Shown piece after piece: positions 27,655-62,973 of a DNA stretch of 64,000 bases (position 1 is the stretch's first letter; every line of letters begins with the position of its first letter). The notes under the pieces were generated by a model. That model searched no databases. It was not told where the DNA came from and worked only from the letters and a program-made list of their open reading frames with translations. The position numbers and the translations under genes were made by a program. Origin of the DNA: Convolutriloba macropyga (Eukaryota); contig NC_134482.1 in NCBI RefSeq assembly GCF_964194025.1, positions 7,688,001 through 7,752,000 of the forward strand. Reading direction: 5' to 3'.

Positions 27655-30600
27655 CAGTAGCTGGAGGCGACTGCATCTGCCGTTGATCTTTCTTCGACGC
27701 TGATTCTAAGTGTTGCTAATTTTCACTTGCTCAATGCTCGCTGTGCGTAAGTTTTTGTATTTACTGGTCTGTTAAAATCACTGAACCTTTCCCACTTAAA
27801 AACAGCTGCCCTTTCTTCAACTTGTATCACGAAGACTGATAACGGTGTATTTTGTCCTCTGAGGCAAACATTAGATTCAATTGCTCTGGACACTCACTCT
27901 CTGGTTGCTGCAACCGGGTCGGCCCAATGAGCCTCTGCACACTGGATTTTCTCTGAGCACTTGAAGACTATCATCAGTAATAGTCCATTGTATTCCGAGT
28001 AAAGAGGATCCCTCGTTATAAGGTTCCACATTGATCTGCTTCGTGTTGCTGATTGACTTCAGGTCTTCTGGGTTGCTGCAGTAAATTCATAGTTGTTGCT
28101 TATTCACTTCTTCAGCTCAAACCCATGCTGCAAACCCATGCTTGAAGTTTGTATTGCATTGCCCTTGCTGTGGTTAGACTCGTTTCTTCATTATCGAATC
28201 CCACTCGCTTGAGAGCATAATTTGCGCGAGTTGGAGAACTCTTGGCTCCAAAAATGGCGCTGATATCCGTATTTTGCAACTGGTTTGTTAGTTCTGGTAA
28301 GCCACAGAAATCTCAAGCAGATTTTGTCCTGTTCCAGAAGTTGCATTTGCAGAAACATTGATTCGATGTTCGCTGTCAGGTCAATTGATCCTTCAGGAAA
28401 TCTGAATATTGTCCCAAACAACCATTCAGTAGATCTGGTACTGCTAGTAACTAGTGGTTTAGGCATACTTCTTTGTGAAAACACGCCTTACTTCGCCTGG
28501 CTTGTTCGGGATTACCACGGTATGGTGGGGCAGATACCACCCCTTCCCGAAAGAGTTCTTATTACGGATTCGTTTAGTACTTCTATGAATCCATTCTATA
28601 AATCTCTATCTGTATCTACTGACTGTAGATACAAACTTTTCAGGTTCGGATCTCTTTTGACCTTCTGCTCCAATTAGTAATGCTGACTCAAGGCTGAGCT
28701 GTAATTGTATGGCAGGTTGGGCTCTGGTTCACTCACCAGTATTCCCACTTCGTTCAGCTCACCTGTAAACTCCTTCGTGCTGTCTAGCATCTTTTGTGCC
28801 TGCATTTTTTCTTCGACTGAGTGACGAAGCTTGACTTTGGAAGCACAAATTTCTATGTCCCACCAGGTTTGGGTATTCTTTGCGAAGGCAAAATGAAAAA
28901 CTATCTGCGTTTTTTTACCCATCAGCGTTCCACTTACTAACCATCCTAGCTCTGTTAGAACGGCGAAAGATTCACTTCCTTTCCTGTCATGTAGTCCGGT
29001 TGATGTTGTAGCTCATAAACATCTTCTCCATGGATGATGCCAACATCCGTCAGGTTCAAGCTCTTGTTCCTCAGAGCAATTGAGAGGTGTGCAAACGCTT
29101 CAACTGAATTCACCTTTGAATGTAGTCCCTCTATTTTGAGAGGAGTTTTTTCTGTCTTCAGATCCTTTGTTCCGTGTATGTCAGCTATGTTGAGTGTAGC
29201 AACAGCGCAGCACCGGGCTCGTAACCTCTCTTGCACCTTTTGGTCGGTAAATGAAAAACTGTTGATCCAATATCGAGGAAAGCATATATGTTCAGCCTGT
29301 TGCCATCGCTCTATATTGAGACACTGATTGTCTGAAGGAAGCTCGTAAATTCTTTAGTCGGATTGGTTGTTGCTGCGCTTACATTGACTGCATGATTGCT
29401 CTCTTCCATTTGGTTATCTTGGCGTAGGGATCGGTTGTGATTCCTGATACATCCGTTGATACCACCTGTTTTGACTCTACAAGCTTTGATAGCTTGTCAT
29501 TTGACCAGAAATCTGTAATAAAAGCGTTGCTTTCTAACTGCTGCATACCGATCATTCACACTCATGTTCCCCAACAATGGACAGTTACAAATCTTATGAG
29601 TGCCATCAACTAGCGGAAAGTGATCATTTTGGATTCGCTTTACTTTTTAAGTAGCATTAACGTTTGGTGTCTCTGAAAAACATTTGCATCTATTCAGTCC
29701 TCTTCGGGCTTCTTCTTTTTGCCTTTTGCTGTCCCCTGAAAGCTGAAAACCCTTCGTGCACAAATGCCATTCTAGATTACCACTTTTCAAACATAACCTG
29801 ACCAGGCCGGTCATCATCTTTACCATCAGCGTAGCACCACCCTTTCTATTTGAGAATTTACGGTACTTTTTCTACTGCCCTATACAATGCCGAGATTGGT
29901 TGCAGATCACCACTCTACTTGTACTTTTTGAGCACTTTCACAAATTTGGAGACAATACCTGAGAAAATGATCAGTCCTGTTGAGTTGTGTAGTTTCAACT
30001 GACTACCCTTGCAAAGACTCTACAGCATGTGCATGAATGATTGCAAGATGCCTTCCAAAATTCCTGTCCAGAGTGCTCCAAGCAGCACCATAGAAAACAC
30101 CAAGAATAGCCCTTTCCACAGACTGCTGAATTTGTCTTGCCTTTCAGTAGAGTCTTCAGGTGGCTCAATTTATGTGAGTCTGGAATTGGTCGTTGATCCA
30201 CTGTAGCAATAAACATACTAGACCACTCCGGCTATTTGAAAAGGTTTCCCTTGAAGTTGTTCAGCTTCAGCTTAGGTAGGTTGCTGCTAACCGATTATCG
30301 TAAACCATCTCTGTGTTAAACGTGGCGGTCCTTGTGAACGACGCCTGATGAACGGTCACCTGGATTTCGATATCGCAAAAAGTGACTATGCGGTTCAGTT
30401 CAGGGGTTATTTCTTACCACTTCAGTTGCTTGGGCATTTTCTGCTCTAGAAGGTGAAGAGTCCATTAGAAGATGCCATTAGTTTATTGGGTCAATCTTTT
30501 TCTTCGATTCTTTTGCAGCCAAAACTTCGTTTAGTGCTAACTTCATCCCCTAAATTCTGATACTTCTTGTTGTATTTGTGTTTGAGCTGCTTATCGATGC

Positions 30601-31646
30601 TTTTCTCTGCTAATTATGCTTGGGTTGCTTGGTTGCTGTTCGCTTTTGCTTTGTTTTCTCCTTTGAAGCAGAGTTTGCGCTCCAATTTTATTATTAAACT
30701 GCACCTTTCTCTTTGGCTCTCTGTCGGTGAGGTGTTGATTCGTTTGATTGTCTTTAGTGGGTGCGTTTGGCATTTTCTTCGTAAGATTGAACAGCAGTTT
30801 GTCTTCCACGGTCCGCGTCGGCGGATCAAATGTAACAGCTGCTCTCCTATCAAAGACAGCAAAAGGATCCCAGTTCGTTTCAGCGGTTTTCAATTTGTCC
30901 GGATATTACGCTTTTGCAACCAACTTTTGTGAACTTTATTATCCGCTATATTAGAAACTTTGTTCCTCAGAAAGATGATGCAAAAAATCAAAGTTAATTT
31001 TCTTTTTAGAAGTCGACGTTTGGTCAAAACTGTACAATCACTAATATAGTTCACAGAAACAAGACGCGATAACAAGTAATATAACGCTCAAGAAATCTGC
31101 TTCAAATCAAACTGTATGTCAGTATAAAACGAACTTTGACAGTGATCAACTGGAACTTTGGTATTTTTCTAAGCTCAATATATACTGCGTCACCTGTCAA
31201 AATTGCATCTTTGAAGGGTTGTAGACATCTATGAGTTCAAATGCTCTGGTTTCACTAAGTCCGGGGTCCGGGATAGCATTTAAGTGCCCCGTACTCCCTG
31301 AAAAGGTAGGAAAATTACAATATTCACTACAACTAGCTTACCAAATTAGGTATCTTTTAGTCCATTTCACCCCAATTCATTCTAACATTGAACGTAATAA
31401 TAGATTTGGTTTAGTCGATGGAGAAGGCGTGGAAATACTGATTTAGTGATAGTATATTTAAGTTAAGCTTCTTGTACTATTAATAGATGTCTAAGTATAG
31501 TCGATGAACAAAATGAACAAATCAATATGGCTTCGATATACGGTAGCATTAATTTTTGCTTGTCAAGCTGTTCTAATCTTACTGCTAAAATTGGCCCGAA
31601 AAATTGTTCAATTTTTTAACTCAATATGTAAAGGTCAGCTATAACA
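25886..31646 (-). mobile_element. Degenerate, internally deleted BEL/Pao LTR retrotransposon
   Basis: LTRs 30831-31646 (TGTTATAG...GTTACA, then PBS-like TTTGATCC) and 25886-26715. Gag fragment (KLSHLKTLLKG), RT fragment (ANIESMFLQ), integrase (FTCL..VH.E, RRGIP..IISDN.TNF). Confidence 0.85.
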
Positions 31647-33140
31647 ACGTTTGATTTCGATTGATTGGAAGTTAACTGTGTTAACGAGGAAACGGTTCGT
31701 ACTGCATTTCATTAAATCGAGTTTCGCAACTACGAATAGCTCATCGTATTGGGCAATATTAGGTGCTATTTAGTTGAGTTCGCGGGATATGTAATTAAGT
31801 AGACCCATCTTTGTGCCTGACATATGTTTGATTTCAAACTTAAAGTGTAGTGAACCGTTCACACAAGAATGAGTATGCTGTTTTATGATTTATTTGATCG
31901 ATGCTCTTTTATTATTGAAGTCAAAGCATGGTGGTCTGTTATGACCGTAAGTTTTTGACCATAGAGATAATACATGAAAGGTGCTACGGCCCAACTACCC
32001 CACACAAGTCTAGTTCATACGCTGTATCTGAGATTCAGACTGAGTTTAAGAAACGGGAGGTAAATGCGACAGTTAACCAAACTTCATGATCTAATTGTAC
32101 TTTTGCCGTGCCTAGTCTTGCCTTGATGCGTTGCCTTTTCTTCTAGTTTCAAGATTGGCTGTTGTAATGTCTGTTTTCTGTAGACTCTGCAATGTTAGAT
32201 TTAATTTCTTCGAAATAATCATTTTGCTCCTTGATCCATCAAATTTGTGGGGCTTTTTCAATAGTGATATGAGTGGATGACAAATTTTTGCAAGTTTGGG
32301 AATAATTTTATTTATAGGATGTCCTGAACCAAGGAATTATGTTTTTTTTAGATTAAATGGTGTTTTCAGATTGAGGATAGTGCTCGTATTTAATTCTATT
32401 GGCTGAATTTCACTCTTTTAGAGTTTATACCCGAGCCACTTTACAAATTTTTTTACGAAGTGAAATTTTGGTAAAGTAATTCTTAAGTTTTTTTCGTCTC
32501 GCTTTTTGTGACATTTTTGGACTAATTTCATGTGTTCATCGATCGTACCGCAGCTGACTATTAATATGTCGTCCAAAACAATATGTGTTTGATGTGTTCT
32601 TTAGTTGTATTAGCTTTGTGTCGATGGCTCTTGAAAGACGGCCGGCTTATCCGTTAATCCAAAAAATCCAGTTTTAATTTGGTATATAACTTTATTATTT
32701 CCGCTTAGGATGTTATACTTGTATTGTCTTGCCATCCCAGGATGTAGATTGAGTTGGCTGTAAGCGTATTGCAAGTCTCTCATTGTAAAGAACGATTTGC
32801 TCTCTTCCGCGTTTAAGCTTAACTTTTTTGATATTACTTGAATTAGGCTGTCTTTGTTCGGCATTTGAGCTGTATTAGTTTAATGTGATAAAGATTCCGA
32901 AGATAAAGTGGTTTTCTGAACAGGCAAAAAATTCCTCAATATAACCTTGATTTAGCAGACTTTCTAGCTCTGATTTGACTTTTTCTTGCAATTTTATTGA
33001 TAATTATTTTCTGCTTTTTGAAGTCTTACGTGATAGTTTTTGTGGAATTCTGATTTTACGGTGTTTTTTGACTTACCAAGTCTTCTAATCAGTCATGGAA
33101 GGGTTTTGCTATTTGATGCTTATTCGGAAATGTTGTGTCG

Positions 33141-33470
33141 AATGAATTGACAAATTTGTTGGTTATTGGTTGCTGTGTTATACAGATTCTCAGTATCTCA
33201 AACAGGTCACATCCTTTCAAAGGTCAAAGTCCGTTTCAACTATCACAAATTATACATTTCTGCGTTCCAGTGTTTTTCTTTACATTTTTTTACACTTTTG
33301 CGGGATTTTTGTGTCAATGCAATTGACAAATTTGTTGGTTATTTGTTGTGATGTGATACAGATTTCCAGTATCTCAAACAGATCACATCCTATCAAAGGT
33401 CAAAGTCCGTTTTCAACTATCACAAATTATACATTTTTGCGTTCCAGTGTTTTTGTTTACATTTTTTTTA
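33141..33470. repeat. ~176-bp tandem duplication within Gypsy 2
   Basis: aattgacaaatttgttggttatt...tttacatttttt occurs twice in tandem. Confidence 0.85.
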
Positions 33471-34654
33471 TATTTTTGCGCTCTAGTTTACTTTTGATAG
33501 TGGATAGTACTGTCCCAGGGCTGCGACTGATCCGTTGGAGATTTTTCATAAATGTTTCTCCCAATTTTCCTTTAAACATTTTGCTCCTTTATATTTTCTA
33601 TGATTGTTGCCGCGCGGTTCTTTGTTACAAATGAACAGACAATACCAGAACAAAATTAAAACTTTCAATGGCTATCACCAAATTTGAATCTCATCGCTTA
33701 GCATTGCCGTGCAATTGTCGTCTGATGAACTGTAGTCCGATTTGTATATCGACTTGTAGTTTTCGACGTTAATTATCATTTCATCTTCGATTTGGTTGTC
33801 ATTTTTGATGTTTTGTACGTTTTGGTTTGTCTGTTTTCGCTTGTTGAAATTCGGGTGAGCTAGTTGTTAACGATTAGCGTTGCAATAACTAGTGTTATTT
33901 TGAACGCTTTTGATTGTTGGTTGCTCGGTGCTATTCATGCTCATATCATTTTGTACTCCTATTTTCATGTTTAGCTGTTTGGAGTGCTTCATCGGGGTCG
34001 ATCTTTTAGCGAAGCGTTGAGTTTCGGCGTTTGACAAGTTTTTTATGAATATGTCTTTAATGATTGTCTTTTCACAGTGTTTTTATTTGAAGTTTCCGCT
34101 AGTTTATTAAGCTTGCTACAAAAATTGTCTACAATTTCTTTTTTTTGTTTTCCCGAGAATAACAGGTACCTGTTGAAGGTAATACTGCGGGGTTTATGAA
34201 GAAAGATTCAATTATTGTCCACATTTCGACTGTTTAACTCGCTATTTAACTGCATGATGATCTTTTCGGTCTAAAAAGCTTCGGCCCTCGCTGCCTTTGT
34301 TCAAGTACAAAAGGGAAGCCGATTTTTGATAACAAATGTTCCGTGGTTAGTCGCAACACAGTAATCTGGCCTCTACTGTCCGCTGTCACTTTAACTCTCA
34401 TGATAGCTTTAGTTTTGCGTTTCTGTATTCTCTCTTTCTTTCAGTTACTTCCGTTGGGTCATCGATCTGTTCTTTATAGCTTGGTTCTAGTGGCAAGAGT
34501 AAATTCTCTGAACTTGGTCCAGTAATACATCTAAAGTTGCCCTCCTTGGCTATGACTGCAAGTTTGACTTGTAAGCGCCACTTTCTCCAATGATTGATGT
34601 TTGGTTGATTATTTTACTTTTCCAGTGTGGGATGATTGATAATGGTGTTTTTTT

Positions 34655-35497: not shown

Positions 35498-37090
35498 CCC
35501 AGGTTGAGGTCCAGACCCAAATTGAGTTATGAACAGACCCAGTCGAGCGCACACCCGTGTGTTCCCAGACCGAAATTACAGGGTCTTTTCGGAAGTTCGA
35601 GCGCACTACGGTCTGGACCATGGTCTGGAGATGGTCTGATCATAGGTCATTTTGGTCTGAAAAGTCTGATCATAGGCGGATTCGAGCGCAATTGGGTCTG
35701 ATCATAATCTCTTCGAGCGCACTTTTGTCTGATCAGAGGCGACTTCGAGAGCAATTGGGTCTGATCATAACCTCTTCGAGCGCACTTTTGTCTGATCAGA
35801 GGCGACTTCGAGCGCGATTGGGTCTGATCATAACCTCATCGAGCGCACTTGGGTCTGACCAGAAATGCTTTTGAACGCAATTGGGTCTGATCAGGGACCA
35901 TTTCGAGCGCATTTTTTCCCTTTTTTTTGTTTTTTTTTTAATGAGAGATGTTGGCTCTGCCAGGAGGCAGCCATAAAGCAGCGTTCTGATAAGAGACTCA
36001 TCTAAAGTCCGATAGCTCTGATCAGAAAGCAGGAGTCCAGCCGATAACAGAGGCCGGCCCCCTACAGAAGAAACTTTGATCAACTTGAGACCACGATGTT
36101 TGTTATGGAAAGCTGTCTAAACTCATCCATTGAGTCAGAATTATACACTAAAAGGTACACTAAATAAAATTTGTTCTCAACAGTTGGGTTACGGTTTCTT
36201 TAGCACTACTTTTTGTAATTGATTTTTCCTTAGAACAATTAAACACTGCAAACATCATTTTTTTTAAATGAATATATTATAGCAAAATTAGAAGATTTTT
36301 CATAAGTAAAATCTTTCTCTGATCAGACTATTTCGAGCGCACTTGGGTCTGATCATAGGCGGATTCGAGCGCAATTGGGTCTGATCATAACCTCTTCGAG
36401 CGCACTTGGGTCTGATCAGAGGCGACTTCGAGCGCAATTGGATCTGATCATAATCTTTTCGAGCGCACTTGGGTCTGATCAGAGGCGACTTCGAGCGCAC
36501 TTGGGTCTGATCAGAGTTCTAATATTTTTATTCAAATTCATCGCAAATCTTTCATTTTATAGCTAATTTTGCAGTAAATTCTCAACCAACGTGTGTGTAA
36601 GTTTTGTGTGCGTTTATCGGGTAACCGGTTTGTCTGTGTCTGTTTGTCTGTGTCTGCGTGTGTGTGTGTGTGAGTGTGTGTGTTGTGGGTGGGGGTCAAG
36701 CGATGGGGTTAGGGCTGAGAAGAAGGCTGATGAGGGGGGGGGGTTCAACTCGATAGGGGGAGGAGAGTGGACAATTTAAGTGTTGTGGTTAAAGGACGGG
36801 AGGGCTGACGATGGCGATTTTGAGTGTTTTTGATCAGAGTGGTTAGCTGGGAAGGTTTTCTCGACTGCAGAGGCTACTGGGTCTGAAATTGGGTCTGATC
36901 ATAGTCTGATTAAGGACTGGGCAATGGTCTGAATTTGAGTCTGGACCATGGTCTGGGGATGGTCTGATCAGAACTCGTTCGGTCTGGAAAGTCTGATCAG
37001 AACTCATTCAGTCTGGAAAATCTGATCAGAGATAATTTTGGTCTGGAAAGTCTGATCAGAAGCAAATTTGGGTCTGGACCTCAACCTGGG
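35498..37090. mobile_element. Non-autonomous CACTA-type element, family 1, copy B (inverted relative to copy A)
   Basis: TIR CCCAGGTTGAGGTCCAGACCCAAATT / AATTTGGGTCTGGACCTCAACCTGGG, TSD AG. Core 35940-36320 is the reverse complement of ~5500-5880. Contains 63-bp tandem units and a TG-rich insert (~36520-36890). Confidence 0.88.
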
Positions 37091-37285
37091 AGTGAATCTT
37101 TTACTCGTTTTACTACATGAGAAAACCCAATGTTTTATGAGCTACCGGGGCAAGTTACTGTTAACCTAAGACATTTATCAATTATAAGCATATTGGTCTT
37201 GACTGTTAGCGAAAAAATGCCTCAATTGTAAAATAAATTTGGAGAGGCTATCAGCTGAAATTTGTTTCGTGCTAACTGAGGATAC

Positions 37286-39900: not shown

Positions 39901-39984
39901 CTTAGGTACCCGCTTTAGCTTGCGAATCCATTATCAACGACAACGGTCCCTGTGTTTATAAAAATTTCTCTTTCCAATTTCTAC

Positions 39985-40218
39985 CTTATTTTCAGAATAG
40001 ACGGGAATCGTAGTATGTGGGTACCAAGCTGATAATGGGAACGAAAGGAAACTCTCATCCAGTAGAACTCTGATGGCACTGCAGGTAGCTCGGAGACGCA
40101 TAACATCTCGAAATGGAGGAAGAGATTCGCGAAGGATTTTCGGTTTTCCGTATGAGTGAATTAAAATCTGACAAATAGTTTGCCATAAGTGCAGTGGAAG
40201 GCTCAGAATATCCGTCAT
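39985..40218 (-). CDS. First coding exon, F-box-like N-terminus
   Basis: MTDILSLPLHLWQTICQIL...DVMRLRATCSAIRVLL fits an F-box pattern (LP..L...I...L ... L..TC..(W/I)R) with an insertion. Donor AAG|GTAGAA at 39985. Confidence 0.6.
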
Positions 40219-40924: not shown

Positions 40925-41052
40925 NNNNNNNNNNNNNNNNNNNNNNNNNNNNNNNNNNNNNNNNNNNNNNNNNNNNNNNNNNNNNNNNNNNNNNNNNNNN
41001 NNNNNNNNNNNNNNNNNNNNNNNNNNNNNNNNNNNNNNNNNNNNNNNNNNNN
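40925..41052. other. Assembly gap (128 N)
   Basis: Run of N. It hides the left terminus of the palindromic element. Confidence 1.
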
Positions 41053-41499
41053 AAGACAGGGGGGGGGGGGGGTAAAAAGACGTACCTATGTATAAAGATT
41101 ACCTATAGCCTATTTTCATCAATTTTCTAAAGACTTACCTAAAAAAGAGAGTGAGAACAATAGACCTGTCATCTTAACATAATTACCCAGGGGTAATTAT
41201 CTTAATTACCCCCAGGGAAATGCATCCAGTTTTCAACTCTAATGCACTTCAGCTAATAATTATCTACTTAATAAAATATATCTGCGGAACTTTTACTTTA
41301 AGCATTTTCTCATTTTATTCATTCGCGCATAGTTATCACAATTACAACTTTTAATCATTTTTCACAATAATATTCAAACATTTTTCATTGTAATTCACAA
41401 GAATTTACCCGATTTTGTGCTGATATACGTAAATTTTGGCAATTTTACCATTTTTTCGCCAAAAGTTCCCAATTCTTGTAAAATAATACCAAACTCTTA

Positions 41500-41830
41500 C
41501 CAAAAATTACCGAAAATACTGACCAAAAAGACCCAATTCCTGGCAAAAAATTACGTAATTTCTGACAAAAATACCCAATTATAACAAAAAAATACCCAAT
41601 TTTTGTCAAAAAATACCCAACTCTGAAGCGAAAATACCTTATTCTTGCCAAGAAATACCCAATTACTGGCAAAAAGTACCCAATTCATCCCAAAAAATAC
41701 ACAATTCTGGTCAAAAAATACCCAATTCTGGCCAAAATATAACTATTTCTTGCCAAAAATTAACCCCATTTGAGCTCAAAATACCCAGTTTTATCAGCAT
41801 AATTCAAAAAATACCCAAATATCAAAGAAA
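41500..41830. repeat. Subterminal ~21-bp AAAAAATACCCAATT minisatellite (mirrored at 48250-48600)
   Basis: Repeated unit visible in both arms, with different copy numbers. Confidence 0.9.
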
Positions 41831-42392
41831 TTTACTCAAAATTTTCCTAAATTGTTCTCATTTCTTCCCATTATTCCCACAACTTTGTTTTTTCAGAACT
41901 TTACAAGTTTTAAAAAATTTATTTTTATAAAGAAAGCTCTCACGTGATCCCATTAATTTTATCTGGATTTAAATGACCTCTGCATTGTGACTACAAAATA
42001 ACAAATATACTGTGTCATCTGTTAATGGGTCTAAAGTTCTCACGTGATTTGACAATTAGTCGCTACATTATCGTCACAATTACTCATAACAGTACGAGTA
42101 CATCATAATAATCCACAATTACGTCAAAGTGTTGTCATAATTACGTCATAATTACGTCACAATTAAGTCACTCTGTCGTCACAATTATCATTATGTCGTC
42201 ATAAATACGTCATGTTCAACAAAGAACTTTTCATTTCGGTCTTTTTTCATTTTTCTGATTTACAGATTTGAGTGCAGTTGAGTACAATAAACTTTACAAC
42301 TTCTGACAAAAAATTTACTTCATCGCAAGTTCGATTTTAACAGTTTTTTACTACCCCTTGCTCACTTCTAATCTCACAACTTATTTTCAGAG

Positions 42393-45097
42393 ATGCCTCG
42401 AAAGTCGGACCAAAAAGAACTTTGCAATTCTTGCGATAAGTCTATCTTGAAATACAATATGAGTAGACATCAAAAGCTTCACGCAAGAGCTTGCCCACAA
42501 TGCTCCCAGTCATTTCCGGACGACGAGAAACTTCAGCGTCACATTGATTCAAAACATGCAGCGTCACTCGTTCAAGAGAAAAAGTTTTCGTGCAGAAGCT
42601 GCAATTTATCGTTTTCCACATACTATCAACTTATTCATCATAAACGAAACAATCACCAGCATTCTGCTCCAGTGGCTTACGATGACGTTGACTTATCTAT
42701 TTACGGAGAATCCTCCGCTCTTCACAGTGAGCTCGAAACCGTCAAACACTTTTTGCAAGACTCGATGCTTGAATTCTCTAGAAAGAAAGTACACAACTTC
42801 AAGTTAGTCGACCTCAGCCACGAAATAGTGATCAATAAATTGGATTTTGTTTACAAAGACTTACCCAGTTCAGCTAAAATCAATATTTCGTTTGGATTCG
42901 TGTGCATAACTCTGACGAAATTCGATACTATTACGCAGCAGATAACAATCCCGTATTCATGAATCCCATTGTTCTCTCTGATGTTTCAGATCTCAGTTTT
43001 ATCAAATCGAAATTGAGAAGTGAAGAACTTCTTCCCAATCTAATTAATCATAGCCCAGACACAAAGTGGAAATTTTATGGCGTTACAAATGTCACATTCT
43101 TTGTATTTTCTTCTCAGTGGTGTTCCGCTTGGATGCATTGAACAACCTATTCCCTCAGCCCTTAGTCAAAAATCCTTGGTTAAATGTTTTATTTCCGATG
43201 GAGAGAAAAAACCCTACCAAGACAACTTGTGTATGATCCGTGCACTGACCTACGAAATAAATGGCAGCGATAAGCTACAGCAAAGTACGTTGAAATTGAT
43301 GCAGTCGTTTCTCTCAGCAACAAAGAAAGATGGCAAGAGCTTTCAAGGAGTACATGAAGATGATATTCACATTCTTGAAGAGCTGACTTACCAAAACATT
43401 CAAGTTTACACAATTTTCATTAACGATCCGTCTGAAATATATACTTACTCGTCGATCCTGCTTAAAGCGTGCACAGACAACATCTTTGTTGAGATATGAG
43501 AATCATATCTGTTGGACAGCAGACATCAATAAGTTCTAAAAGAATTCCGGTGCTATGTATGCGATCAGTTTTTCGATAGATCAAACAATTTGTTGGTCCA
43601 TCTCAGGAACACACAACATAGGTATCCCTCAGGAGCTTATCAGCTGTCAGAGACTGTTTTCCGATTGGCTGGAAGTCGTTAATATTATGGTTCCAGCAGA
43701 ACTGAGATCATTTTCTCACTTAATTGTTTTTCGATTTTGAGTCAATAACAGTTACTGACATGACTCTCAACAACACCGAATTGACTTCTTGGATTGGGAA
43801 ACATGTTCGCATTAGTGTGTCGATATCTTCTAAGCTTCTTGAAGAGATCATTTTCCTTTGCAAACTCAGATCCGAACCAGTTAATTCGAGATTTTGTGTC
43901 TAACCTTGAGTTGATATCGCAGAAAAGAGCAATCCATATGAAGGAAAAATTGCAAAACTTCATTTCTCGACTTGAAGAAAACTATTGGCTTGCTCGAGAC
44001 AAAGTTCCCGTGCGAGAGAACGAAGGACTCGTCAATGATGATGCAGGAACTGGCGAGGATGAAGAGGATTCCAATTCTACTAGAGACCGAAGAGAGCTCA
44101 AAATTCTATCGAGTTTGAGACAAGATTTGGAGAATTACTACAGTGCAATCCCCGTGTTTGGTTTCAACAGCTCGCGATACGACTTAAGTTTGATTAAAGA
44201 ATATCTTTTGCTACATTTACTCACAGAGAGAAATGTTGTTCCCAAGGTGATTCGTACGGGGAACAAATATATGGAATGAACTTTCTTGGCTTGCAATGTC
44301 TCGACATTTTGAACTTCCTGGGAGGAGCTACAACTCTGGTTAATTTTTGAAAGCGTATGAAGCCAGTGAAGAGAATGGTTTTTTTCCCCTTATGAGTGGT
44401 TTGACAGTGCTGAAAAGTTGAATGAGAACCAACTGCCACCAATTGAAAGTTTCTGGAGTAAGTTGAAAAACCATAACGTCTTGTCAGTCGATTACGATAA
44501 GTTCATGGTTACAAAAAAGGGGGAATTGAAGAAAAGGAAGCTTTAAAAAAGCTGAAATTAAAAAACAGTTCCCAAAAATGCAGAGGAAAACTATCGGGAA
44601 CTTCAAAACATTTGGGAAAAGGAGAACATGAACACATTTCGCGATTTTCTCAAGTGGTATACCAACAAAGACGTCGTGCCCACTCTTGATGCGATGACAA
44701 AGATGATTCAATTCTACCACTCAAAACAAATTGATATGTTGAAACTGGGCTATACGCTTCCCAACTTGGCAAACAGAATTCTCCATTCGTCAACAGATGC
44801 TGCATTTTTCCATTCTGCAAGCAAGACAAGGAATATGATAGCTATATCAGAAATTGGCTGACGGGAGGACCCTCGATTATCTTCACCCGATATGCAAAAG
44901 CAGGCGAAACCAAGATTAGAGAGTCCGAAAATGTGTGCAAGTCTATTGTGGGCATTGATGCGAGTCAACTTTACCCATTCTCAATGACCAAGGAAATGCC
45001 AACGGGACTATACACAAAAATGGGAATTCAATGACGACACTGCAAAGTTCCACCAAAAAGGAATTGGAGGAGTTTTTTGAGCAGCAGGTAATAGAAT
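42393..45097 (+). pseudogene. Protein-primed DNA polymerase B with N-terminal C2H2 zinc fingers, left arm; frameshifted and truncated after motif A
   Basis: Three C2H2 fingers (42393-42962), Exo II VFGFNSSRYDL, Exo III FLKWY..KDVVP, GGPSIIFTRY, motif A GIDASQLYPFSM at ~44951-44986. Confidence 0.88.
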
Positions 45098-47667
45098 ACT
45101 TGCACACATTTTTCGGACTCTCTAATCTTGGTTTCGCCTGCTTTTGCATATCGGGTGAAGATAATCGAGGGTCCTCCCGTCAGTCAATATCTGATATAGC
45201 TATAAAATTCCTTGTCTTGCTCGCAGAATGGAAAAAATGCAGCATCTGTTGACGAATGGAGAATTCTGTTTGCCAAGTTGGGAAGCGTATAGCCCAGTTC
45301 CAACATATCAATTTGTTTTGAATGGTGGAATTGAATCATCTTTGTCATCGCATCAAGAGTGGGCACGACGTCTTTGTTGTTATACCACTTGAGAAAATCG
45401 CGGAATGTGTTCATGTTCTCCTTTTCCCAAATGTTTTGAAGTTGGCGATAGTTTTCCTCTTCATTTTTGGGAACTGTTTTTAATTTCAGCTTCTTTAAAG
45501 CTTCCTTTTCTTCAATTCCCCTTTTTTTGCAATCTATGAACTTATCGTAATCGACTGACAAGACGTTATGGTTTTTCAACTTACTCCAAAAACTTTCAAT
45601 GGTGGCAGTTGGGTCTCATTCAACTTTTCAGCACTGTCAAACCACTCATAAGGGAAAAAACCCTTCTCTTCACTGGCTTCATACGCTTTCAAAAAATTAT
45701 CCAGAGTTGTAGCTCCTCCCAGGAAGTTCAAAATGTCGAGAAATTGCAAGCCAAGAAAGTTCATTCCAATATATTTGTTCCCCGTACGAATCACCTTGGG
45801 AACAACATTTCTCTCTGTGAGTAAATGTAGCAAAAGATATTCTTTAATCAAATTTAAGTCGTATCGCGAGCTGTTGAAACCAAACACGGGGATTGCACTG
45901 TAGTAATTCTCCAAATCTTGTCTCAAACTCGATAGAATTTTGAGCTCTCTTCGGTCTCTAGTAGAATTGGAATCCTCTTCATCCTCGCCAGTTCTGCATC
46001 ATCATTGACGAGTCCTTCATTTTCTCGCACGGGAACTTTGTCTCGAGCAAGCCAATACTTTGATTCATGTCGAGAAATGAAGTTTTGCAATTTTTCCTTC
46101 ATAAGGATTGCACTTTTCTGCGATATCAGCTCAAGGCTAGACACAAAATCTCGAATTAACTGGTTCGGATCTGAGTTGCAAAGGAAAATGATCTCTTCAA
46201 GAAGCTCAGAAGATATCGACACACTAATGGGAACATGTTTCCCAATCCAAGAAGTCAATTCGGTGTTGTTGAGAGTCATGTCAGTAACTGTTATTGACTC
46301 AAAATCGAAAACAATTAAGTGAGAAAATGATCTCAGTTCTGCTGGAACCACAATATTAACGTCTTCCAGCCGATCGAAAACAGTCTCTTGACAGCTGATA
46401 AGCTCCTGAGGGATACCTCTGTTGTGTGTTTTCGGAAACAATTTCTGAGATGGACCAACAAATTGTTTGATCTATCGAAAAACTGATCGCATACATAGCA
46501 CCGGAATTCTTTTAGGAACTTATTGATGTCTGCTGTCCAACAGATATGATTCTCATATCTCAACAAAGATGTTGTCTGTGCACGCTTTAAGCAGGATCGA
46601 CGAGTAAGTATATATTTCAGACGGATCGTTAATGAAAATTGTGTAAACTTGAATGTTTTGGTAAGTCAGCTCTTCAAGAATGTGAATATCATCTTCATGT
46701 ACTCCTTGAAAGCTCTTGCCATCTTTCTTTGTTGCTGAGAGAAACGACTGCATCAATTTCAACGTACTTTGCTGTAGCTTATCACTGCCATTTATTTCGT
46801 AGGTCAGTGCACGGATCATACACAAGTTGTCTTGGTAGGGTTTTTTCTCTCCATCGGAAATAAAACATTTAACCAAGGGATTTTTGACTAAGGCTGAGGG
46901 AATAGGTTGTTCAATGCATCCAAGCGGAACACCACTGAGAAGAAATACAAAGAATGTGACATTTGTAACGCCATAAATTTTCCACTTTGTGTCTGGGCTA
47001 TGATTAATTAGATTGGGAAGAAGATCTTCACTTCTCAATTTCGATTTGATAAAACTGAGATTTGAGTCATCAGAGAGAACAATGGGATTCATGAATACGG
47101 GATTCTTATCTGCTGCGTAATAGTATCGAAATTCGTCAGAGTTATGCACACTCTGCAGCACGAGTCGAAACGAAATATTGATTTTAGCTGAACTGGGTAA
47201 GTCTTTGTAAACAAAATCCAATTTATTGATCACTATTTCGTGGCTGAGGTCGGCCAACTTGAAGTTGTGTACTTTCTTTCTAGACAATTCAAGCATCGAG
47301 TCTTTCAAAAAGTGTTTGACGGTTTCGAGCTCACTGTGAAGAGCGGAGGATTCTCCATATATAGATAAGTCAACGTCATTGTAAGCCACTGGAGCAGAAT
47401 GCTGGTGATTGTTTCGTTTATGATGAATAAGTTGATAATATGTTGATAACGATAAATTGCAGCTTCTGCATGAAAACTTTTTCTCTTGAATGAGTGACGG
47501 TGCATGTTTTGAAGCAATGTGACGCTGAAGTTTCTCGTCGTCTGGAAATTACTGGGATCATTGTGGGCAAGCTCTTGCGTGAAGCTTTTGATGTCTACTC
47601 ATATTGGATTTCAAGATAGTTTTATCGCAAGAATTGCAAAGTTCTTTTTGTCCGACTTTCGAGGCAT
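45098..47667 (-). pseudogene. pPolB with C2H2 fingers, right arm (inverted copy); ends just before motif A
   Basis: ATG at 47667. Fragments include CYVCDQFF..LVH, LIVFDFESI (Exo I), GFNSSRYDL, FLDILNFL, KGFFPYEWF and YNNKDVVP. Confidence 0.88.
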
Positions 47668-49069
47668 CTCTGAAAATAAGTTGTAAGACTAGAAGTGAGC
47701 AAGGGGGAGTAAAAAATCGTTAAAATCGAACTTGCGGTGAAGTAAAGTTTTTGTCAGAAGTTGTAAACGTTATTGTACTCAACTGCACTCAAATCTGTAA
47801 ATCAGAAAAATGAAAAAAGACATAAATGAAAAGTTCTTTGTTGAACATGACGTATTTATGACGGCATAATGACGTAATTGTGACGACAGATTGACTTAAT
47901 TGTGACGTAATTATGACGTAATTATGACAACACTTTGACGTAATTGTGGATTACTATGATATACTCGTACTGTTATGAGTAATTGTGACGATAATGTAGT
48001 GACTAATTGTCTAATCACGTGAGAATTTTAGACCCATTAACAGATGACACAGTATATTTGTTATTTTATAGTTACAATGCAGAGGTCATTTAACTCCAGA
48101 TAAATATAATGGGATCACGTGAGAGCTTTCTTTATTACAATAAAATTTTGAAAACTTGTAAAGTTCTGAAATAATGAAATTGTGGAAATAATGGAAGAAA
48201 TGAGAACCAATTTAGGAAAAATTTTGAGTAAATTTCTTTGTGTGTATTTTGAGCTCAAATGGGGTTAATTTTTGGCAAGAAATATTTATATTTTGGCAAG
48301 AATTGGGTATTTTTTTGATAAGAATTTGGTATTATCCACGAATTGGGTTCTTTTTTTAATGAATTGAGTATTTTTGCCACGAATTTTGTAATTTTTGACC
48401 AGAATTGGGTATTTTTTGGGAAGAATTGGGTATTTTTTGCCAGTAATTGGGTATTTCTTGGCAAGAATAAGGTTTTTTCGCTTCAGAGTTGGGTATTTTT
48501 TGACAGAAATTGGGTATTTTTTGTTATAATTGGGTATTTTTGTCAGAAATTACGTAATTTTTTGCCAGGAATTGGGTCTTTTTGGTCGGTAGTTGGGTAA
48601 TTTTTGATAAGAGTTTGGTATTATTTTACAAGAATTGGAAACTTTTGGCAAAAAATGGTAAAATTGCCAAAATTTACGTATATCAGCACAAAGTCGGGTA
48701 AATTCTTGTGAATTACAATGAAAAATGATAAAATAGTATTGTGAAAAATGATTAAAAGTTGTAATTGTGATAACTATGCGCGAATGAATAAAATGAGAAA
48801 ATGCTTAAAGTAAAAGTTCCGCAGATATATTTTATTAAGTAGATAATTATTAGCTGAAGTGCATTTGAGTGGAAAACTGGATGTATTTCCCTGGGGGTAA
48901 TTAAGATAATTACCCCTGCGTAATTATGATAAGATGACAGGTCTATTGTTCTCTCTCTCTCTTTTTTAGGTACGTCTTTAGAAAATTGATGAAAATAGGC
49001 TATAGGTAATCTTTATACATAGGTACGTCTTTTTACCCCCCCCCCCTGTCTTGCTTAGCCTCTACTACT

Positions 49070-49087
49070 TATATTTATATATATAAT

Positions 49088-49133
<46 letters not shown>
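49070..49133. repeat. (TA)n microsatellite at the Polinton right flank
   Basis: Direct observation. Confidence 0.95.
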
Positions 49134-55413: not shown

Positions 55414-56753
55414 TTATCGGTTGCTAAAATTTTGTGAAGCAAAAAAAAACATTCCAGAAGAACTGTTATGTTGCGCTAATTAGTAATGGTCACCAAACTA
55501 AACTATTTTAAATCAATTTTTCTTTTCGCGCTGTCATTTGACCTGTCAATCACTTGTCAGAAATTTATTTCTGTCGCCCAAATAAACATGACTCTAATAT
55601 CCACTGACTTCAGAAAGCTCAGCTTGATTGTATCACTGGCATGTATATTTCTCATGAAAATCATTGAAAAAAAATTACGTCCAGGATGCCGAAGCGAAAT
55701 CCATTCATGACCCAATAGAGTGAAACTTTTTGACTCATTAAAATTTTCTATATTTTTCATAGATACATGCTATAAATACAGCTAGAGTTTGTATACTTTT
55801 AGCTCTAATTTTACTTAAAAATTTAACTACTGAAGGTTTTTGAAAATCAAACAGCTTTTTGTCACAAGTCTATTTCTTACTAAGTAGATTCAAGACCCAC
55901 TTCTTAAACTTAGCAGCTTGGTTTAAAGTTGCGCATTATTATTGGTCCTATGACGGTATTTGATATACGGTTTAAAAAGAACAGATCAGTGATTCCCAGC
56001 TAAAATTCTCAAGCATCAATTATTACTTGAGGCAAGCGCAATAAAGGGTGTAGGGATTCGGACATCAATTTTTTCGCATGTAATAGAGAAGGAATACGCT
56101 ATTGTGACCTCGCAAAGTTCAAAACAGTAACCAACTTTCTATCGAAGAAGGAAGAAAAATCGGCACAGTAATAGATGACCAGGAAGCAAAACTTAGACTA
56201 CGAGACGGCATTAAAGCATAACCAATAACGAAAATATCTGTTACAGAAATGCCCGAGAGTCTACATATCAGATGGTAGGCGAGGGGTTTGTGAGCTCTTC
56301 TTTGGGTAAAAAAGTCATTGCATTCTAAGAGGAAGCTGGGCACAACATTTGAAAACTTTTCCAAAAACAAAACAATACCTTCAGGAACACAACAATGTTT
56401 TGTGCGCTGAATGTTGAGATATGTCATATTCAAGTCAAATTCTGCGCTGAAGAAAAAATTTCAACATAAGTGAAAAAGTGCGACATTCCTCAAATCCAGA
56501 AACCCCAACCAAATTAAATAAGTACAACGAAAAACAATTTTTCTGACGAAATATACAATCCCTCGGTGCAAGTAAGAAATTATTTGATAATCAAGTACAA
56601 ACTTATAGCATGTCTGTAACATATTGGCATTTATCGTTAAAAAATTGCACAGGACAAATTTAAGTGGTTGACTGCACATGAAAATCACCTGAAATGTGGA
56701 CTGAGTTCCCTAAATCTCTGTCTGTTGAAAATAAAAGACATCCCGAAGCATAT

Positions 56754-57349
56754 TGTCATACAGATTTGGTTACTGTATGCCGAGTAGACTTGCAGTGCCA
56801 AATGACAGAGTTTATCGATTAGATTTATTGGCTATTTGGCGGAGCGAATTCAATATTAATTTTGTAATTTATTAATCCAATTTTCTGAGTGCAGAGAATA
56901 CGTAAAATTGGTGGCACGAAATTAGCTTTATCAACTAGACTCGTATTTCGCTTTACTAAATGTAGTTTAGAATTGTTCGATATGAATTAGCGCTTTAGCG
57001 GAGCGGATTTCAGATTAAAAGAGAGACATCTGAATTTGAATTAGGAAAGATGAAGTATGAGGAAATTAAAGTTAACTAAATCTGAACAACAATTTGATCA
57101 CAACAAAATATCTCTAAACGCGGCAACTCAAATCACAAGACTTCGTGAACAGACATGGTTTTCAGACACAGGATGTAAACAAATTAAAGAAACGTGAAAC
57201 ATGAAGATTTAATCTTCAAACAAGAAATTGGAAATGAAATTAAACTAAATGATAAACAAAATGAACTAAATTAAGATTAACTTAAATTAAATTCATTTGG
57301 TATACCCAAATCAATAGCCCCTTTTGACACAATGTTCTACTATATCACA
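56754..57349 (-). repeat. Gypsy 1 3' LTR (596 bp)
   Basis: TG...CA ends with a short terminal inverted repeat, adjacent PPT. Confidence 0.9.
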
Positions 57350-57923
57350 TTTCCCCATCAACAAAATAAGCGACGAAGTAGTTTATAAGAAAATAATAAC
57401 ATATGTACTGATTACTATAAATAATACTATTATGTTTTTGCAAGTTTTAATCTGTATCACTTTCATATAATCTCTCTGCCTCTCCGACTGCCATTGACTT
57501 CTCTGGACCCTCGTAATTGGGTGAAATGTAATACTGGGTCGGATGCGTTTGTACAGGAGAACATGGCCCCACTGTAACATCTGTTTCTACATGTTGACTT
57601 TGAGTGGCAGTTTTCTTAATTGATGTAATAATAGATTTGTTCTGTATTTGTGTCTGTTTAATTAGTTGTCTTCGTTTACTTCGCGAGGGTGCAGTGGAGC
57701 TCGAAGTTGTTGGCGGACAGGTTTGGACGGGTGCCAATGAGTCCTCCGATTCCGTGATTGACGGAGAAGATCATTTACTCTTTAATGGCTGTAGTGCTGC
57801 TGTTGCCTTTGTGGCAGCTTTCCTTTTTGGTCTCGTTGGAGGCTCCGCAATCACAATCGATGTCAATGGCAGCTCCATTGGTGGCGCGAAATCACATATG
57901 TCTTCTGTAGGTGGCTGTGGCGG

Positions 57924-59297
57924 TGCTGTTATGACTGTTCTTTTGGGTTTCGTTGGCATGCGTACTCTGAGCGCTCTTGTGACGTTCGAAGGAATTGAGG
58001 ATACCGCAATAGCGTCGTCGGCTATCTTCCTATGTTTCATTCTTTTGTTTCCCTCTAATTTCTTTCTTGCCTCTTTCGCGTGTTGATTTATGAGGTCTTC
58101 TGTTGTTTTTCCGGAGGGTATTTTGGGCCTCCTATTGGCGTACATTTGGAGTTCAGTTTGGCGCACCGCTTTCGTTCCGAATTTCGCCAAATCTGAATTG
58201 CGGATTGTAACGTCTCTTTTTCCGGGTTCTTTTATGACAGAAGCATATCTGTCTGTTTTTACCAATGAAGAACCTGGCGCCAAAACCTCGTACAGTCCAT
58301 CTAGACTTTTCTTCGACCTTTTGGTCTTCGGTTTCTTTTTGGCTAAGTTGGCTGCTAGGGAAGTTTCTGTCCGCGGTACTGGCAAACCGACCTCAGGATG
58401 AGAAATCATTTTGGACTCTTTTTTTGGATCCGAGTTCCTTCTTCTAGCTGCATCTTTGCTCAGTTTGTCCCTGTTATGTTCTAATTCCGTGTCGCTTCTG
58501 TTGAAAACTTTTCCAAAAACAAAACAATACCTTCAGGAACACAACAATGTTTTGTGCGCTGAATGTTGAGATATGTCAAATTCAAGTCAAATTCTGCGCT
58601 GAAGAAAAAAATTTTCAACATAAGTGAAAAAGTGCGACATTCCTCAAATCCGTGTAGGCGGAAACCCCAACCAAACTAAATAAGTACAACGAAAAACAAT
58701 TTTTCTGACGAAATATACAATGCTGTTATGACTGTTCGTTTGGGTTTCGTTGGCATGCGTACTTTGAGCGCTCTTGTGACGTTCGAATGAATTGAGGATA
58801 CCGCACTAGCGTCGTCGGCTATCTTCCTATGTTTCATTCTTTTGTTTCCCTCTAATTTCTTTCTTGCCTCTTTCGCGTGTTGATTTATGAGGTCTTCTGT
58901 TGTTTTTCCGGACGGTATTTTGGGCCTCATATTGACGTACATTTGGAGTTCAGTTTGGCGCTCGGTTTTCATTCCGAATTTCGTCAAATCTGTATTGCGG
59001 ATTGTGACGCCTCTTTTTCCGGGTTCTTTTATGACAGAAGTATATGTGTCTGTTTTTACCACTGAAGAACCTGTCGCCAAAACCTCGTACAGTCCATCTA
59101 GATTTTTCTTCGACCTTTCGGTCTTCGGTTTCTTTTTGGCTAATTTGACTGCTAGGGAAGTTTCTGTCCGCGGTACTGGCAAACCAATCTCAGAATGAGA
59201 AATCATTTTGGACTCTTTTTCTGGATCCGCGTTCCTTCTTCTAGTTGCATCTGTGCTCAGTTTGTCCCTGTTATGTTCTAATTCCATGTCGCTTCTG
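57924..59297. repeat. 577-bp internal duplication separated by a 220-bp copy of flanking DNA
   Basis: 57924-58500 matches 58721-59297. 58501-58721 matches 56349-56559. Confidence 0.92.
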
Positions 59298-59499
59298 GCT
59301 TCTACGTCCCAGTTTTCTTCCGAAATGAGTTCGTCCCAACGGACTGTCTCCAAATCTAAATATTTATTCAAAATCTGTTTATACGTGAGACTTTTAGGAT
59401 CAAGTTTCGTTAATATGTTACTTAATGGAGTATTGGCCTTTCTACCAAAGTGGGCTTCAAATGGTGATATATTGATAGTCTTTTGACGGCATATATGTG

Positions 59500-62400: not shown

Positions 62401-62973
62401 CGTTTGTTACTACCGTGATTATTGCTTTATGAATTTTCAACGAACTGGCGTTTTTAATGTTCCTAGTGTTTCAACTATATCGTTCGAAAAAGACGTTAAA
62501 TTGATTGGTTTTTTCTCCGACCGTTATGATTGCGCACAATTAAGCATTATTTCTCTTGCGAGTGACATATTAATAATAGTACAACAACTACCATAATCGA
62601 GAAGCAAATGACAGTCTGTATTTCCAATCTTTATCGTCATATTTTGCAGTGCAATATGCGGTGTGCTAAGATTTTCTAACGTTGCAACGTAATTATCGTC
62701 TGAAGAATCGTAATCAGAGTTGAATTGTTTATTATAGTTTATATAATTAACGTTTTGATTTTCAGAATTTGAATTTTGTTTTGTAGTTTCAGCAGTTTCT
62801 ACATTATTAATTTGATTACCTTGTCGAGAAGTATTCGTGTAGTATTGACCTTTTTTCGACATGCTTTGCGAAGTGGTTAGACAAACCGCAATAATTGCAT
62901 CTTTTACCCAGTGCAGGGCAAACCTGGCGGTGCGTTGTAGTCCAAGCCTGACCACATCCTCAACATTGACCAA
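59500..62973 (-). pseudogene. pol: Gypsy pol (protease, RT, RNase H, integrase), fragmented
   Basis: ORF fragments 62524-62973, 61850-62440, 61630-61971, 61340-61729, 60730-61320 and 60222-60791, plus frameshifted integrase at 59500-60200. Confidence 0.9.

What the first reader, a model, noticed from the sequence alone, without database searches (positions are those of the whole stretch)
42393..47667. Possible hairpin-RNA silencer of Polintons (Mu-killer-like locus)
Seen: two convergent pPolB copies with identical upstream regions. A transcript starting in either arm and crossing the spacer would fold into a stem of more than 2.5 kb. The element also lies ~0.8 kb upstream of the divergently oriented F-box exon 1, so a host promoter is nearby. 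Established: maize Mu killer is an inverted duplication of one MuDR end whose hairpin RNA silences the family in trans. Inference: this locus could supply siRNAs or piRNAs against related Polintons or Polinton-like viruses.
Basis: inference. Interest (0 to 1): 0.75.

Follow-up and report, generated by a model that had tools for sequence, protein, structure and literature searches.

The report
Inverted duplicate of a Polinton end
Two decayed, truncated copies of the polymerase end of a virus-like Polinton-type element lie tail to tail as an 8-kb near-palindrome; RNA read across its centre would fold into a long hairpin, but sequence alone cannot show that it is transcribed or silences anything.

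Summary
The inverted repeat is real and larger than reported. The left arm is 41053-44942 and the right arm 45098-49052. Aligned bases are 96.7% identical, with about 32 indel events. [quoted passage not shown] The 155-nt "spacer" is the left copy running further than the right. Both copies lack the C-terminal ~530 residues and are broken: 15 frameshifts in the left copy, 6 frameshifts plus 3 stops in the right. Almost all breaks are arm-specific, and arm-to-arm coding differences look neutral (pN/pS ~0.65, not significant). This points to one fold-back duplication followed by decay. Full-length relatives are polymerases with a VSR-like endonuclease insert, the type described for mollusc and marine-nematode Polintons. 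No other Polinton gene is in the window. An N run touches the left arm, so the element ends are unreadable and an assembly artefact is not excluded. A read-through RNA would form a hairpin, so the Mu-killer analogy holds structurally. Transcription, small RNAs and targets are untested. The "F-box" neighbour is not confirmed.

The parts
39934..40218 (-).
   Evidence: ORF list. Pfam F-box-like only E 0.093, 13 bits against a cut-off of 24.3. No exact product on record.
40925..41052 (.). Run of 128 N (assembly gap or masked stretch) touching the left arm; hides the left outer end. Not filled.
41053..44942 (+). Left arm of the inverted repeat (3890 nt visible)
   Evidence: pairs with 45098-49052, 96.7% identity at aligned bases
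41053..42392 (+). Left non-coding terminal/upstream region: G run near the outer end, 21-nt tandem array (about 41440-41851), 11/22-nt array carrying TGACGTAAT (42114-42213)
42393..45097 (+). Left copy of the protein-primed DNA polymerase gene. It has an N-terminal C2H2 zinc-finger part, is truncated at the 3' end and is broken (15 frameshifts, 0 in-frame stops against P0157). It includes the 'spacer'.
   Evidence: aligns to residues 5-928 of P0157 (1456 aa), 51% identity
44943..45097 (+). Unique 155-nt centre ('spacer'): the stretch by which the left copy runs further than the right
45098..49052 (-). Right arm of the inverted repeat
45098..47667 (-). Right copy of the polymerase gene, truncated at the 3' end and broken (6 frameshifts, 3 in-frame stops against P0157)
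   Evidence: aligns to residues 14-877 of P0157, 49% identity. One piece hits Pfam PF03175 at E 8e-4.
47668..49052 (-). Right non-coding terminal/upstream region: 11/22-nt array with TGACGTAAT (47847-47948), 21-nt tandem array (about 48241-48647), G run near the outer end
49070..49133 (.). (TA)32 microsatellite just outside the right arm (flank, not element)

Best explanation
The locus is the dead remnant of one end of a Polinton-type virus-like element, duplicated in inverted orientation by a single fold-back (strand-switch) event.

Each arm carries the non-coding terminal region and the first ~60% of the element's protein-primed DNA polymerase gene. One copy runs 155 nt further than the other, and that overhang is the loop. 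This geometry is what results when a growing DNA strand leaves its template and copies back along itself or the complementary strand. The event may have happened in the chromosome at a resident element, or in a replicating linear form before integration. The rest of the element is gone: the polymerase C-terminus, integrase, capsid and packaging genes.

After the event both arms decayed independently and neutrally. Nothing functional is encoded.

The one activity the anatomy allows is as a template for double-stranded RNA. Each arm keeps its ATG and its own promoter-like upstream region. A transcript that starts in either arm, or outside, and passes the centre must fold into a 2.6-3.9 kb imperfect hairpin. 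Convergent transcripts would also pair. In an animal this would be a substrate for siRNA or piRNA pathways.

Shown: the structure, the gene identity, the truncation, the break counts, neutral divergence and foldability. Inferred: the fold-back origin, the promoter activity and any small-RNA output. I think incidental small-RNA production is plausible, and a selected silencer role is unlikely but open.
For: Geometry. The arms are 41053-44942 and 45098-49052, and the unique 155 nt continue the left copy's frame.

Gene identity.
- A 116-aa piece finds 1920 relatives (776 at E<=1e-10), including proteins of 1000-1800 aa.
- 8 of 21 long relatives hit Pfam DNA_pol_B_2 and 4 hit zf-C2H2.
- A profile of the long relatives matches the VSR endonuclease structures 1vsr, 1cw0 and 1odg at E 2e-5.
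- This architecture is described for pPolB2 of mollusc and marine-nematode Polintons (PMC10748475).

Truncation. Both copies end at residues 928 and 877 of 1456, just before the VSR-like region at about 949-1022.

One event, then decay.
- The two truncation points are 155 nt apart.
- The arms differ by 20 frame-changing indels in the coding part, matching the 15+6 frameshifts counted against a relative. The breaks are therefore arm-specific.
- pN/pS between arms is 0.64-0.69 (p 0.09-0.17), and differences are spread 22/19/25 over codon positions.

Hairpin potential.
- The inner 1401 nt fold at -1089 kcal/mol.
- There are 59 perfect blocks of 21 nt or more, covering 75% of the arm; the longest is 267 nt.
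- The first AATAAA lies about 1.75 kb beyond the centre in either direction.

Own promoter-like regions. All 7 TGACGTAAT sites in the window lie in two clusters 180-280 nt upstream of the two ATGs, against 0.54 expected by chance.
Against: - No expression or small-RNA data can be consulted.
- The left arm touches an N run, so the contig starts inside the repeat, a place where assembly errors gather.
- Indels are frequent relative to substitutions (32 events against 127), ts/tv is 0.8, and the arm next to the N run has more frameshifts (15 against 6). All of this could reflect sequence quality rather than age.
- The element ends and any target-site duplication are unreadable, so 'Polinton end' is inferred from the gene and from the literature. 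No integrase, capsid, ATPase or protease match was found among ORFs of 110 aa or more in the window.
- pN/pS is below 1, though not significantly, so some divergence could predate the joining.
- Only 5 nt of complementarity mark the junction, which is no proof of a strand switch.
Confidence: 0.6

Rival explanations
1. Assembly artefact. The genome holds a single copy of this element end, or two alleles of it, and the assembler folded the path back at a contig end to create a false palindrome.
For: The left arm begins exactly at an N run, so the contig starts inside the repeat. The arm next to the N run has more frameshifts, and 1-nt indels are frequent. Arm divergence of about 3% is within the allelic range of highly heterozygous invertebrates (my own knowledge). 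Allelic differences in a dead element would also look neutral.
Against: The junction and both arms lie in one uninterrupted stretch of sequence. Artefacts that copy one molecule twice (missed adapters, amplification chimeras) give near-identical arms, not 127 substitutions plus tandem-array length differences of 81 and 35 nt. Mismatches outnumber indels 4 to 1, unlike raw long-read error. The N run may also be deliberate masking rather than a gap.
Confidence: 0.15
2. Selected trans-silencer. The palindrome is kept by the host because its hairpin RNA yields siRNAs or piRNAs that repress active members of the same element family. This is the Mu-killer-like reading of the first reader.
For: The architecture matches Mu killer: a partial inverted duplication with one terminal region and the 5' part of the key gene (PMC3440606). 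A long foldable stem is present. Each arm retains a promoter-like cluster and its ATG. No early AATAAA follows the centre. Small-RNA control of Polintons is an open question (PMC11414722).
Against: There is no sign of conservation. The arms decay neutrally and are not homogenised: bins range from 93% to 99.6% identity and average 96.7%. No near-identical relatives are shown; the best protein relatives are 53-84% identical fragments, and the closest full-length one is about 50%. The host-promoter argument is weak. Function cannot be read from sequence.
Confidence: 0.12
3. Two independent element copies that came to lie tail to tail, by nested or adjacent insertion followed by deletions, rather than by one duplication.
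For: The family is multi-copy: 40 fragment relatives, on 39 different long contigs. pN/pS is somewhat below 1. Identity varies along the arms.
Against: Both copies would have to be truncated within 155 nt of the same point of a gene longer than 4 kb. Differences are spread evenly over codon positions and are not significantly depleted at non-synonymous sites. The arms are far closer to each other (96.7% DNA) than to any relative found (84% protein identity or less).
Confidence: 0.07
4. Internal-deletion derivative of an element whose terminal inverted repeats had already grown to about 3.9 kb and included the 5' part of the polymerase gene.
For: Non-autonomous DNA elements commonly keep both ends and lose the middle (general knowledge). 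Both arms begin with the same terminal region.
Against: It still needs an earlier inverted duplication of the gene's 5' part, so it adds a step. Polinton terminal repeats reported in the papers read are hundreds of bp, for example 744 bp in C. elegans (PMC11414722).
Confidence: 0.04

Closest known systems
Maize Mu killer (Muk)
   Same: A partial inverted duplication holding two copies of one terminal region plus the 5' part of the element's key gene. It is predicted to give a hairpin RNA of about 4 kb (PMC3440606). The stem here would be 2.6-3.9 kb.
   Different: Muk derives from a cut-and-paste plant transposon, is transcribed by read-through from a flanking gene, and has genetically proven heritable silencing with siRNAs. 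Here the source is a Polinton-type virus-like element and the arms are 3.3% diverged. No transcript, small RNA or target is shown, and a flanking promoter is not established.
Animal hairpin-RNA (hpRNA) endo-siRNA loci, e.g. Drosophila hpRNAs that suppress selfish genes
   Same: A long inverted repeat with a short loop, derived from a copy of the target gene (PMC10317233).
   Different: Those loci are defined by Dicer-dependent siRNAs and by derepression of targets in mutants. None of that can be tested here, and the host is unknown.
Polinton remnants at the C. elegans eri-6/7 locus
   Same: Fragments from the polymerase end of a Polinton, including terminal repeats, left in a host locus as repeats with consequences for RNA processing (PMC11414722).
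   Different: There, 744-bp terminal repeats act as direct repeats for trans-splicing of a host gene. Here 3.9-kb arms include 2.5 kb of polymerase coding sequence, form a palindrome, and show no link to a host gene.
VSR-type pPolB2 Polintons of molluscs and a marine nematode
   Same: Relatives of the window's polymerase carry a VSR-like endonuclease insert. This is the feature given as a synapomorphy of that pPolB2 subgroup (PMC10748475).
   Different: The window copies stop just before that insert, so they do not show it themselves. N-terminal C2H2 fingers are not mentioned in that paper ('zinc finger' occurs 0 times). No integrase linkage is shown here.
Copy-back and snap-back defective viral genomes
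   Same: One genome end duplicated in inverted orientation around a short unique turn-around. This is explained by the polymerase leaving the template and copying back along the nascent strand (PMC13506859). Inverted-repeat defective DNA of adenovirus, also a protein-primed replicon, is cited from my own knowledge.
   Different: Those are extrachromosomal replication products, mostly of RNA viruses. This is chromosomal DNA whose ends cannot be read, so a chromosomal fold-back is equally possible.

Membership tests
Polinton / Maverick element | [quoted passage not shown] | tested here: met
   Present twice, truncated and broken. There is a sub-threshold PF03175 hit on one piece. Frameshift-aware alignment to P0157, itself PF03175 at E 2.7e-12, covers about 850-890 codons at about 50% identity. 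Relatives were found.
Polinton / Maverick element | Retroviral-type integrase gene linked to the polymerase | tested here: not met
   No integrase match among ORFs of 110 aa or more in the window. The repeat holds only the terminal region and the polymerase 5' part.
Polinton / Maverick element | Capsid (major and minor), packaging ATPase and maturation protease genes | tested here: not met
   No such Pfam match in the window. Small or broken ORFs under 110 aa outside the repeat were not scanned.
Polinton / Maverick element | Terminal inverted repeats flanked by a short target-site duplication | tested here: inconclusive
   The left outer end lies under the N run and the repeat runs flush into it. 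The termini cannot be placed without other copies, which I did not fetch.
VSR-type pPolB2 subgroup (PMC10748475) | VSR-like endonuclease domain inserted in the polymerase | tested here: inconclusive
   Present in relatives: profile A1 against 1vsr at E 2e-5, 19 of 21 rows occupied, Vsr/DUF559 Pfam hits. The window copies end upstream of it, at residues 928 and 877 against 949-1022.
Mu-killer-type hairpin silencer | Inverted duplication of a partial element containing one end and the 5' part of its key gene | tested here: met
Mu-killer-type hairpin silencer | Transcript reading through the inverted duplication (from a flanking or own promoter) | not testable with these tools
   There are only promoter-like motif clusters and a lack of early AATAAA. 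The neighbouring 'F-box' exon is unconfirmed.
Mu-killer-type hairpin silencer | Small RNAs from the arms and heritable silencing of active family members in trans | not testable with these tools
   No RNA data. The closest relatives found are fragments 53-84% identical at protein level, of unknown genome.
Integrated snap-back defective genome of a protein-primed replicon | Both outer ends are the same element terminus, flush with the element end and flanked by one target-site duplication | tested here: inconclusive
   The visible outer parts of the arms match up to the N run. The terminus and duplication are unreadable.

The most novel reading that the evidence does not exclude
The palindrome is an integrated snap-back defective genome. 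In this reading a Polinton replicating as a free linear, protein-primed molecule switched strands inside its polymerase gene. That produced a molecule with the same terminus at both ends, which was then integrated. It would be a genomic fossil of the extrachromosomal replication step long proposed for Polintons. As a hairpin template it may now feed small-RNA control of the family.
Probability: 0.12. Interest if true: 0.65.

Novelty: new member of a known kind. Interest (0 to 1): 0.3.

Why it matters
How hosts control Polintons is largely unknown. [quoted passage not shown] A natural hairpin-forming locus made from a Polinton polymerase end would be a concrete place to look, using descriptive RNA data.

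Separately, the fold-back geometry could show whether these elements pass through a free, self-replicating linear stage. That would require the outer ends to turn out to be true element termini with one target-site duplication.

As it stands, the locus is a decayed transposon-derived inverted duplication of a familiar general kind, next to an N run and with no functional evidence. Its value is as a lead, not a result.

Tried and rejected
Searches that gave little or nothing
- Pfam on ten ORF pieces gave only zinc fingers and one sub-threshold polymerase hit.
- PDB sequence searches with two pieces gave only low-complexity repeat-protein hits and nothing for polymerases.
- The profile of long relatives found VSR endonuclease and zinc fingers, but no solved polymerase.
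- Rfam and tRNA scans of the window were empty, so they gave no clue to the host.
- An exact look-up of the F-box-like ORF found nothing. Cluster look-ups gave no names or organisms. The host species therefore remains undetermined.

Order of the protein searches
- I ran the all-against-all representative search before the word search. The pieces are fragments of a protein of more than 1000 aa, and the word search filters by length. The word search then added only fragment relatives.

Ideas rejected or weakened
- A repeat-induced or editing-like mutation bias at DNA level is not there; the substitution spectrum is balanced.
- Two independent insertions are rejected by the shared truncation and the neutral pattern.
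- The host-promoter argument from an F-box exon is weakened.
- tblastn alone was unsuitable for counting breaks, because its alignments ran through out-of-frame stretches. I replaced it with a frameshift-aware alignment that printed counts and bounds only.

Left out on purpose
- Fetching DNA around relatives, or scanning collections for the junction.
- Reading under the N run.
- Any consensus of the family to polarise changes.

Slips
- No tool call used letters from memory; the pattern came from the unit printed.
- One search printed mismatch and gap counts per 250-nt bin, which coarsely localises arm-to-arm indels.
Full report
**1. What is there**

Repeat finding and a self-BLAST of the window show one dominant inverted repeat. 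The left arm is 41053-44942 and the right arm 45098-49052. The unique centre between them is 155 nt (44943-45097).

A global alignment of the arms gives 3710 matches, 127 mismatches (57 transitions, 70 transversions) and about 32 gap events, 23 of them of 1 nt. Aligned bases are 96.7% identical.

The finding's limits, 42393 and 47667, are the two start codons. The "identical upstream regions" lie outside it and are not identical: mismatches are 4.4% upstream against 2.8% in the coding part, and the tandem arrays differ in length.

A run of 128 N (40925-41052) touches the left arm, and the repeat runs flush into it. The outer limit of the repeat cannot be seen. I did not try to fill the N run.

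**2. Anatomy of an arm**

Reading from the outside, each arm contains:
- a G run;
- about 0.4 kb of 21-nt tandem units, 15-18 copies;
- an 11/22-nt array carrying TGACGTAAT, 180-280 nt upstream of the ATG. All 7 occurrences of that 9-mer in the 64-kb window lie in these two arrays, against 0.54 expected by chance;
- the reading frame itself, whose first piece has C2H2 zinc fingers (zf-C2H2_4, E 2.8e-9).

**3. The gene**

Pfam gives only one sub-threshold polymerase match on the pieces (PF03175, E 8e-4). PDB sequence searches with pieces were uninformative.

A HMMER search of 1.84 billion representatives with a 116-aa piece found 1920 relatives, 776 of them at E<=1e-10. They include proteins of 1000-1800 aa.

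Of 21 long relatives:
- 8 match DNA_pol_B_2;
- 4 match C2H2 fingers;
- 2-3 match Vsr/DUF559.

A profile of these long relatives matches the solved VSR endonucleases 1vsr, 1cw0 and 1odg at E 2e-5. Polymerases with a VSR insert are described as a subgroup of pPolB2 in integrase-linked Polintons of molluscs and one marine nematode (PMC10748475). The Polinton label therefore rests on the gene type and the literature.

No integrase, capsid, ATPase or protease match was found among the window's ORFs of 110 aa or more. Sources give no names or organisms, so the host is undetermined. I treated the element as a virus-like element of an animal.

**4. State of the two copies (counts only)**

I aligned each copy to the closest full-length relative, P0157 (1456 aa), allowing frameshifts.

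| Copy | Window span | P0157 residues | Identity | Frameshifts | In-frame stops |
|---|---|---|---|---|---|
| Left | 42396-45093 | 5-928 | 51% | 15 | 0 |
| Right | 45099-47638 | 14-877 | 49% | 6 | 3 |

A second reference, P0021, gave 13 frameshifts and 0 stops for the left copy, and 5 and 3 for the right.

Both copies lack the last ~530 residues. They end just before the VSR-like region, which maps to P0157 residues 949-1022. Even with open frames, neither could encode a complete polymerase.

The centre continues the left copy, so the two truncation points are 155 nt apart.

**5. One event or two copies?**

The arms differ by 20 frame-changing indels in the coding part. That is about the sum of the frameshifts counted per arm, so the breaks are arm-specific and arose after the copies separated.

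Codon-by-codon counts between the arms give pN/pS of 0.64-0.69, not significantly different from neutral (p 0.09-0.17). Differences fall 22/19/25 over the three codon positions.

Together with the shared truncation, this fits a single inverted duplication of a then-open gene fragment, followed by neutral decay. It fits poorly with two family members that diverged as working elements.

The geometry is that of a fold-back or copy-back: a strand is copied to a point, then copied back from a point 155 nt upstream on the other strand. Defective viral genomes of this form are explained by a polymerase moving from the template to the nascent strand (PMC13506859). A chromosomal fold-back during replication or repair gives the same picture.

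Only 5 nt of complementarity sit next to the arms, which proves nothing. With the ends hidden, I cannot say whether the event was extrachromosomal or chromosomal.

**6. Artefact?**

For an artefact:
- the contig begins inside the left arm;
- that arm has more frameshifts;
- 1-nt indels are frequent.

Against an artefact:
- both arms and the junction are continuous sequence;
- the arms differ by 127 substitutions and by tandem-array lengths, unlike artefacts that copy one molecule twice;
- mismatches outnumber indels 4 to 1.

I put the artefact at about 15%.

**7. Can it work as a hairpin source?**

- The inner 1401 nt fold as one stem at -1089 kcal/mol.
- Over the whole arm there are 59 perfectly paired blocks of 21 nt or more, covering 75% of it. 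The longest is 267 nt.
- The natural 3' end of the gene is missing. After crossing the centre, the first AATAAA comes about 1.75 kb later in either direction.
- Each arm keeps its ATG and a promoter-like motif cluster, so convergent transcription needs no host promoter.

Whether RNA is made, processed or effective cannot be tested here.

The nearest relatives in public protein data are 40 unnamed fragments at 53-84% identity, on 39 different long contigs. The closest full-length protein is about 50% identical. No near-identical target is shown.

**8. Comparison with known systems**

Structurally, this is the same kind of thing as maize Mu killer (PMC3440606) and the hairpin-RNA loci of flies (PMC10317233). 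It is related in source material to the Polinton remnants at C. elegans eri-6/7 (PMC11414722).

My literature searches found no description of a Polinton-derived hairpin locus. The held library is incomplete, so this is not proof of absence.

I file it as a new member of a known kind: a transposon-derived inverted duplication and candidate hairpin locus. It is not a complete Polinton.

**10. Verdict**

- Most likely (about 0.6): a real, dead fold-back remnant that could give double-stranded RNA if transcribed.
- A selected silencer role: about 0.12.
- Interest: 0.3.

Noticed in passing
window 42393-42959 (+) and 46336-46566 (-); relatives P0089, P0099, P0082, P0092: The polymerase family has C2H2 zinc fingers at its N-terminus. 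The nematode Polinton polymerase paper I read does not mention this ('zinc finger' occurs 0 times). Whether the fingers bind the 21-nt subterminal repeats is pure speculation.
   Followed up: partly
relatives of the window polymerase (alignment A1; P0157 residues ~949-1022): There is a VSR-like endonuclease insert in 19 of 21 long relatives, matching PDB 1vsr at E 2e-5. Two relatives also carry a NADAR domain. Both window copies end just upstream of the VSR-like insert.
   Followed up: partly
window 41440-41851 and 48241-48647; 42114-42213 and 47847-47948: Each arm's non-coding part holds two tandem arrays. One has 21-nt units (15-18 copies, with copy number differing between arms). The other has 11/22-nt units carrying TGACGTAAT, found nowhere else in the window.
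   Followed up: partly
window 49070-49133: A (TA)32 microsatellite lies 18 nt beyond the last visible base of the right arm, so the element may sit in TA-rich DNA.
   Followed up: no
window 20000-34000; 22962-25014 and 25618-27654: This block has strongly negative AT skew and contains a 2-kb tandem duplication (91% identity), with weaker copies at 30.8-31.6 kb. Its ORFs have no Pfam match. Its nature is unknown.
   Followed up: no
window 8600-15300: LINE-like fragments are present: endonuclease (11124-11555, -) and reverse transcriptase (10193-10711, -), plus a second RT piece (14661-15254, +). A 185-nt inverted pair lies at 11553-11736 / 12750-12934.
   Followed up: no
window 56300-64000: An LTR-type retroelement lies on the minus strand, with RT at 61633-61971 and RNase H at 60733-61320. 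Direct repeats at 56349-56559/58501-58721, 57924-58500/58721-59297 and 56754-56895/63856-64000 suggest nested or tandem copies.
   Followed up: no
window 5100-6300 and 35500-37100: Inverted matches of 81-86% with internal short tandem repeats point to another repeat family present in both orientations about 30 kb apart.
   Followed up: no
whole window: There are no tRNA genes and no Rfam family at gathering threshold. CpG observed/expected is 0.91 and GC about 31-42%. The host was not identified.
   Followed up: partly
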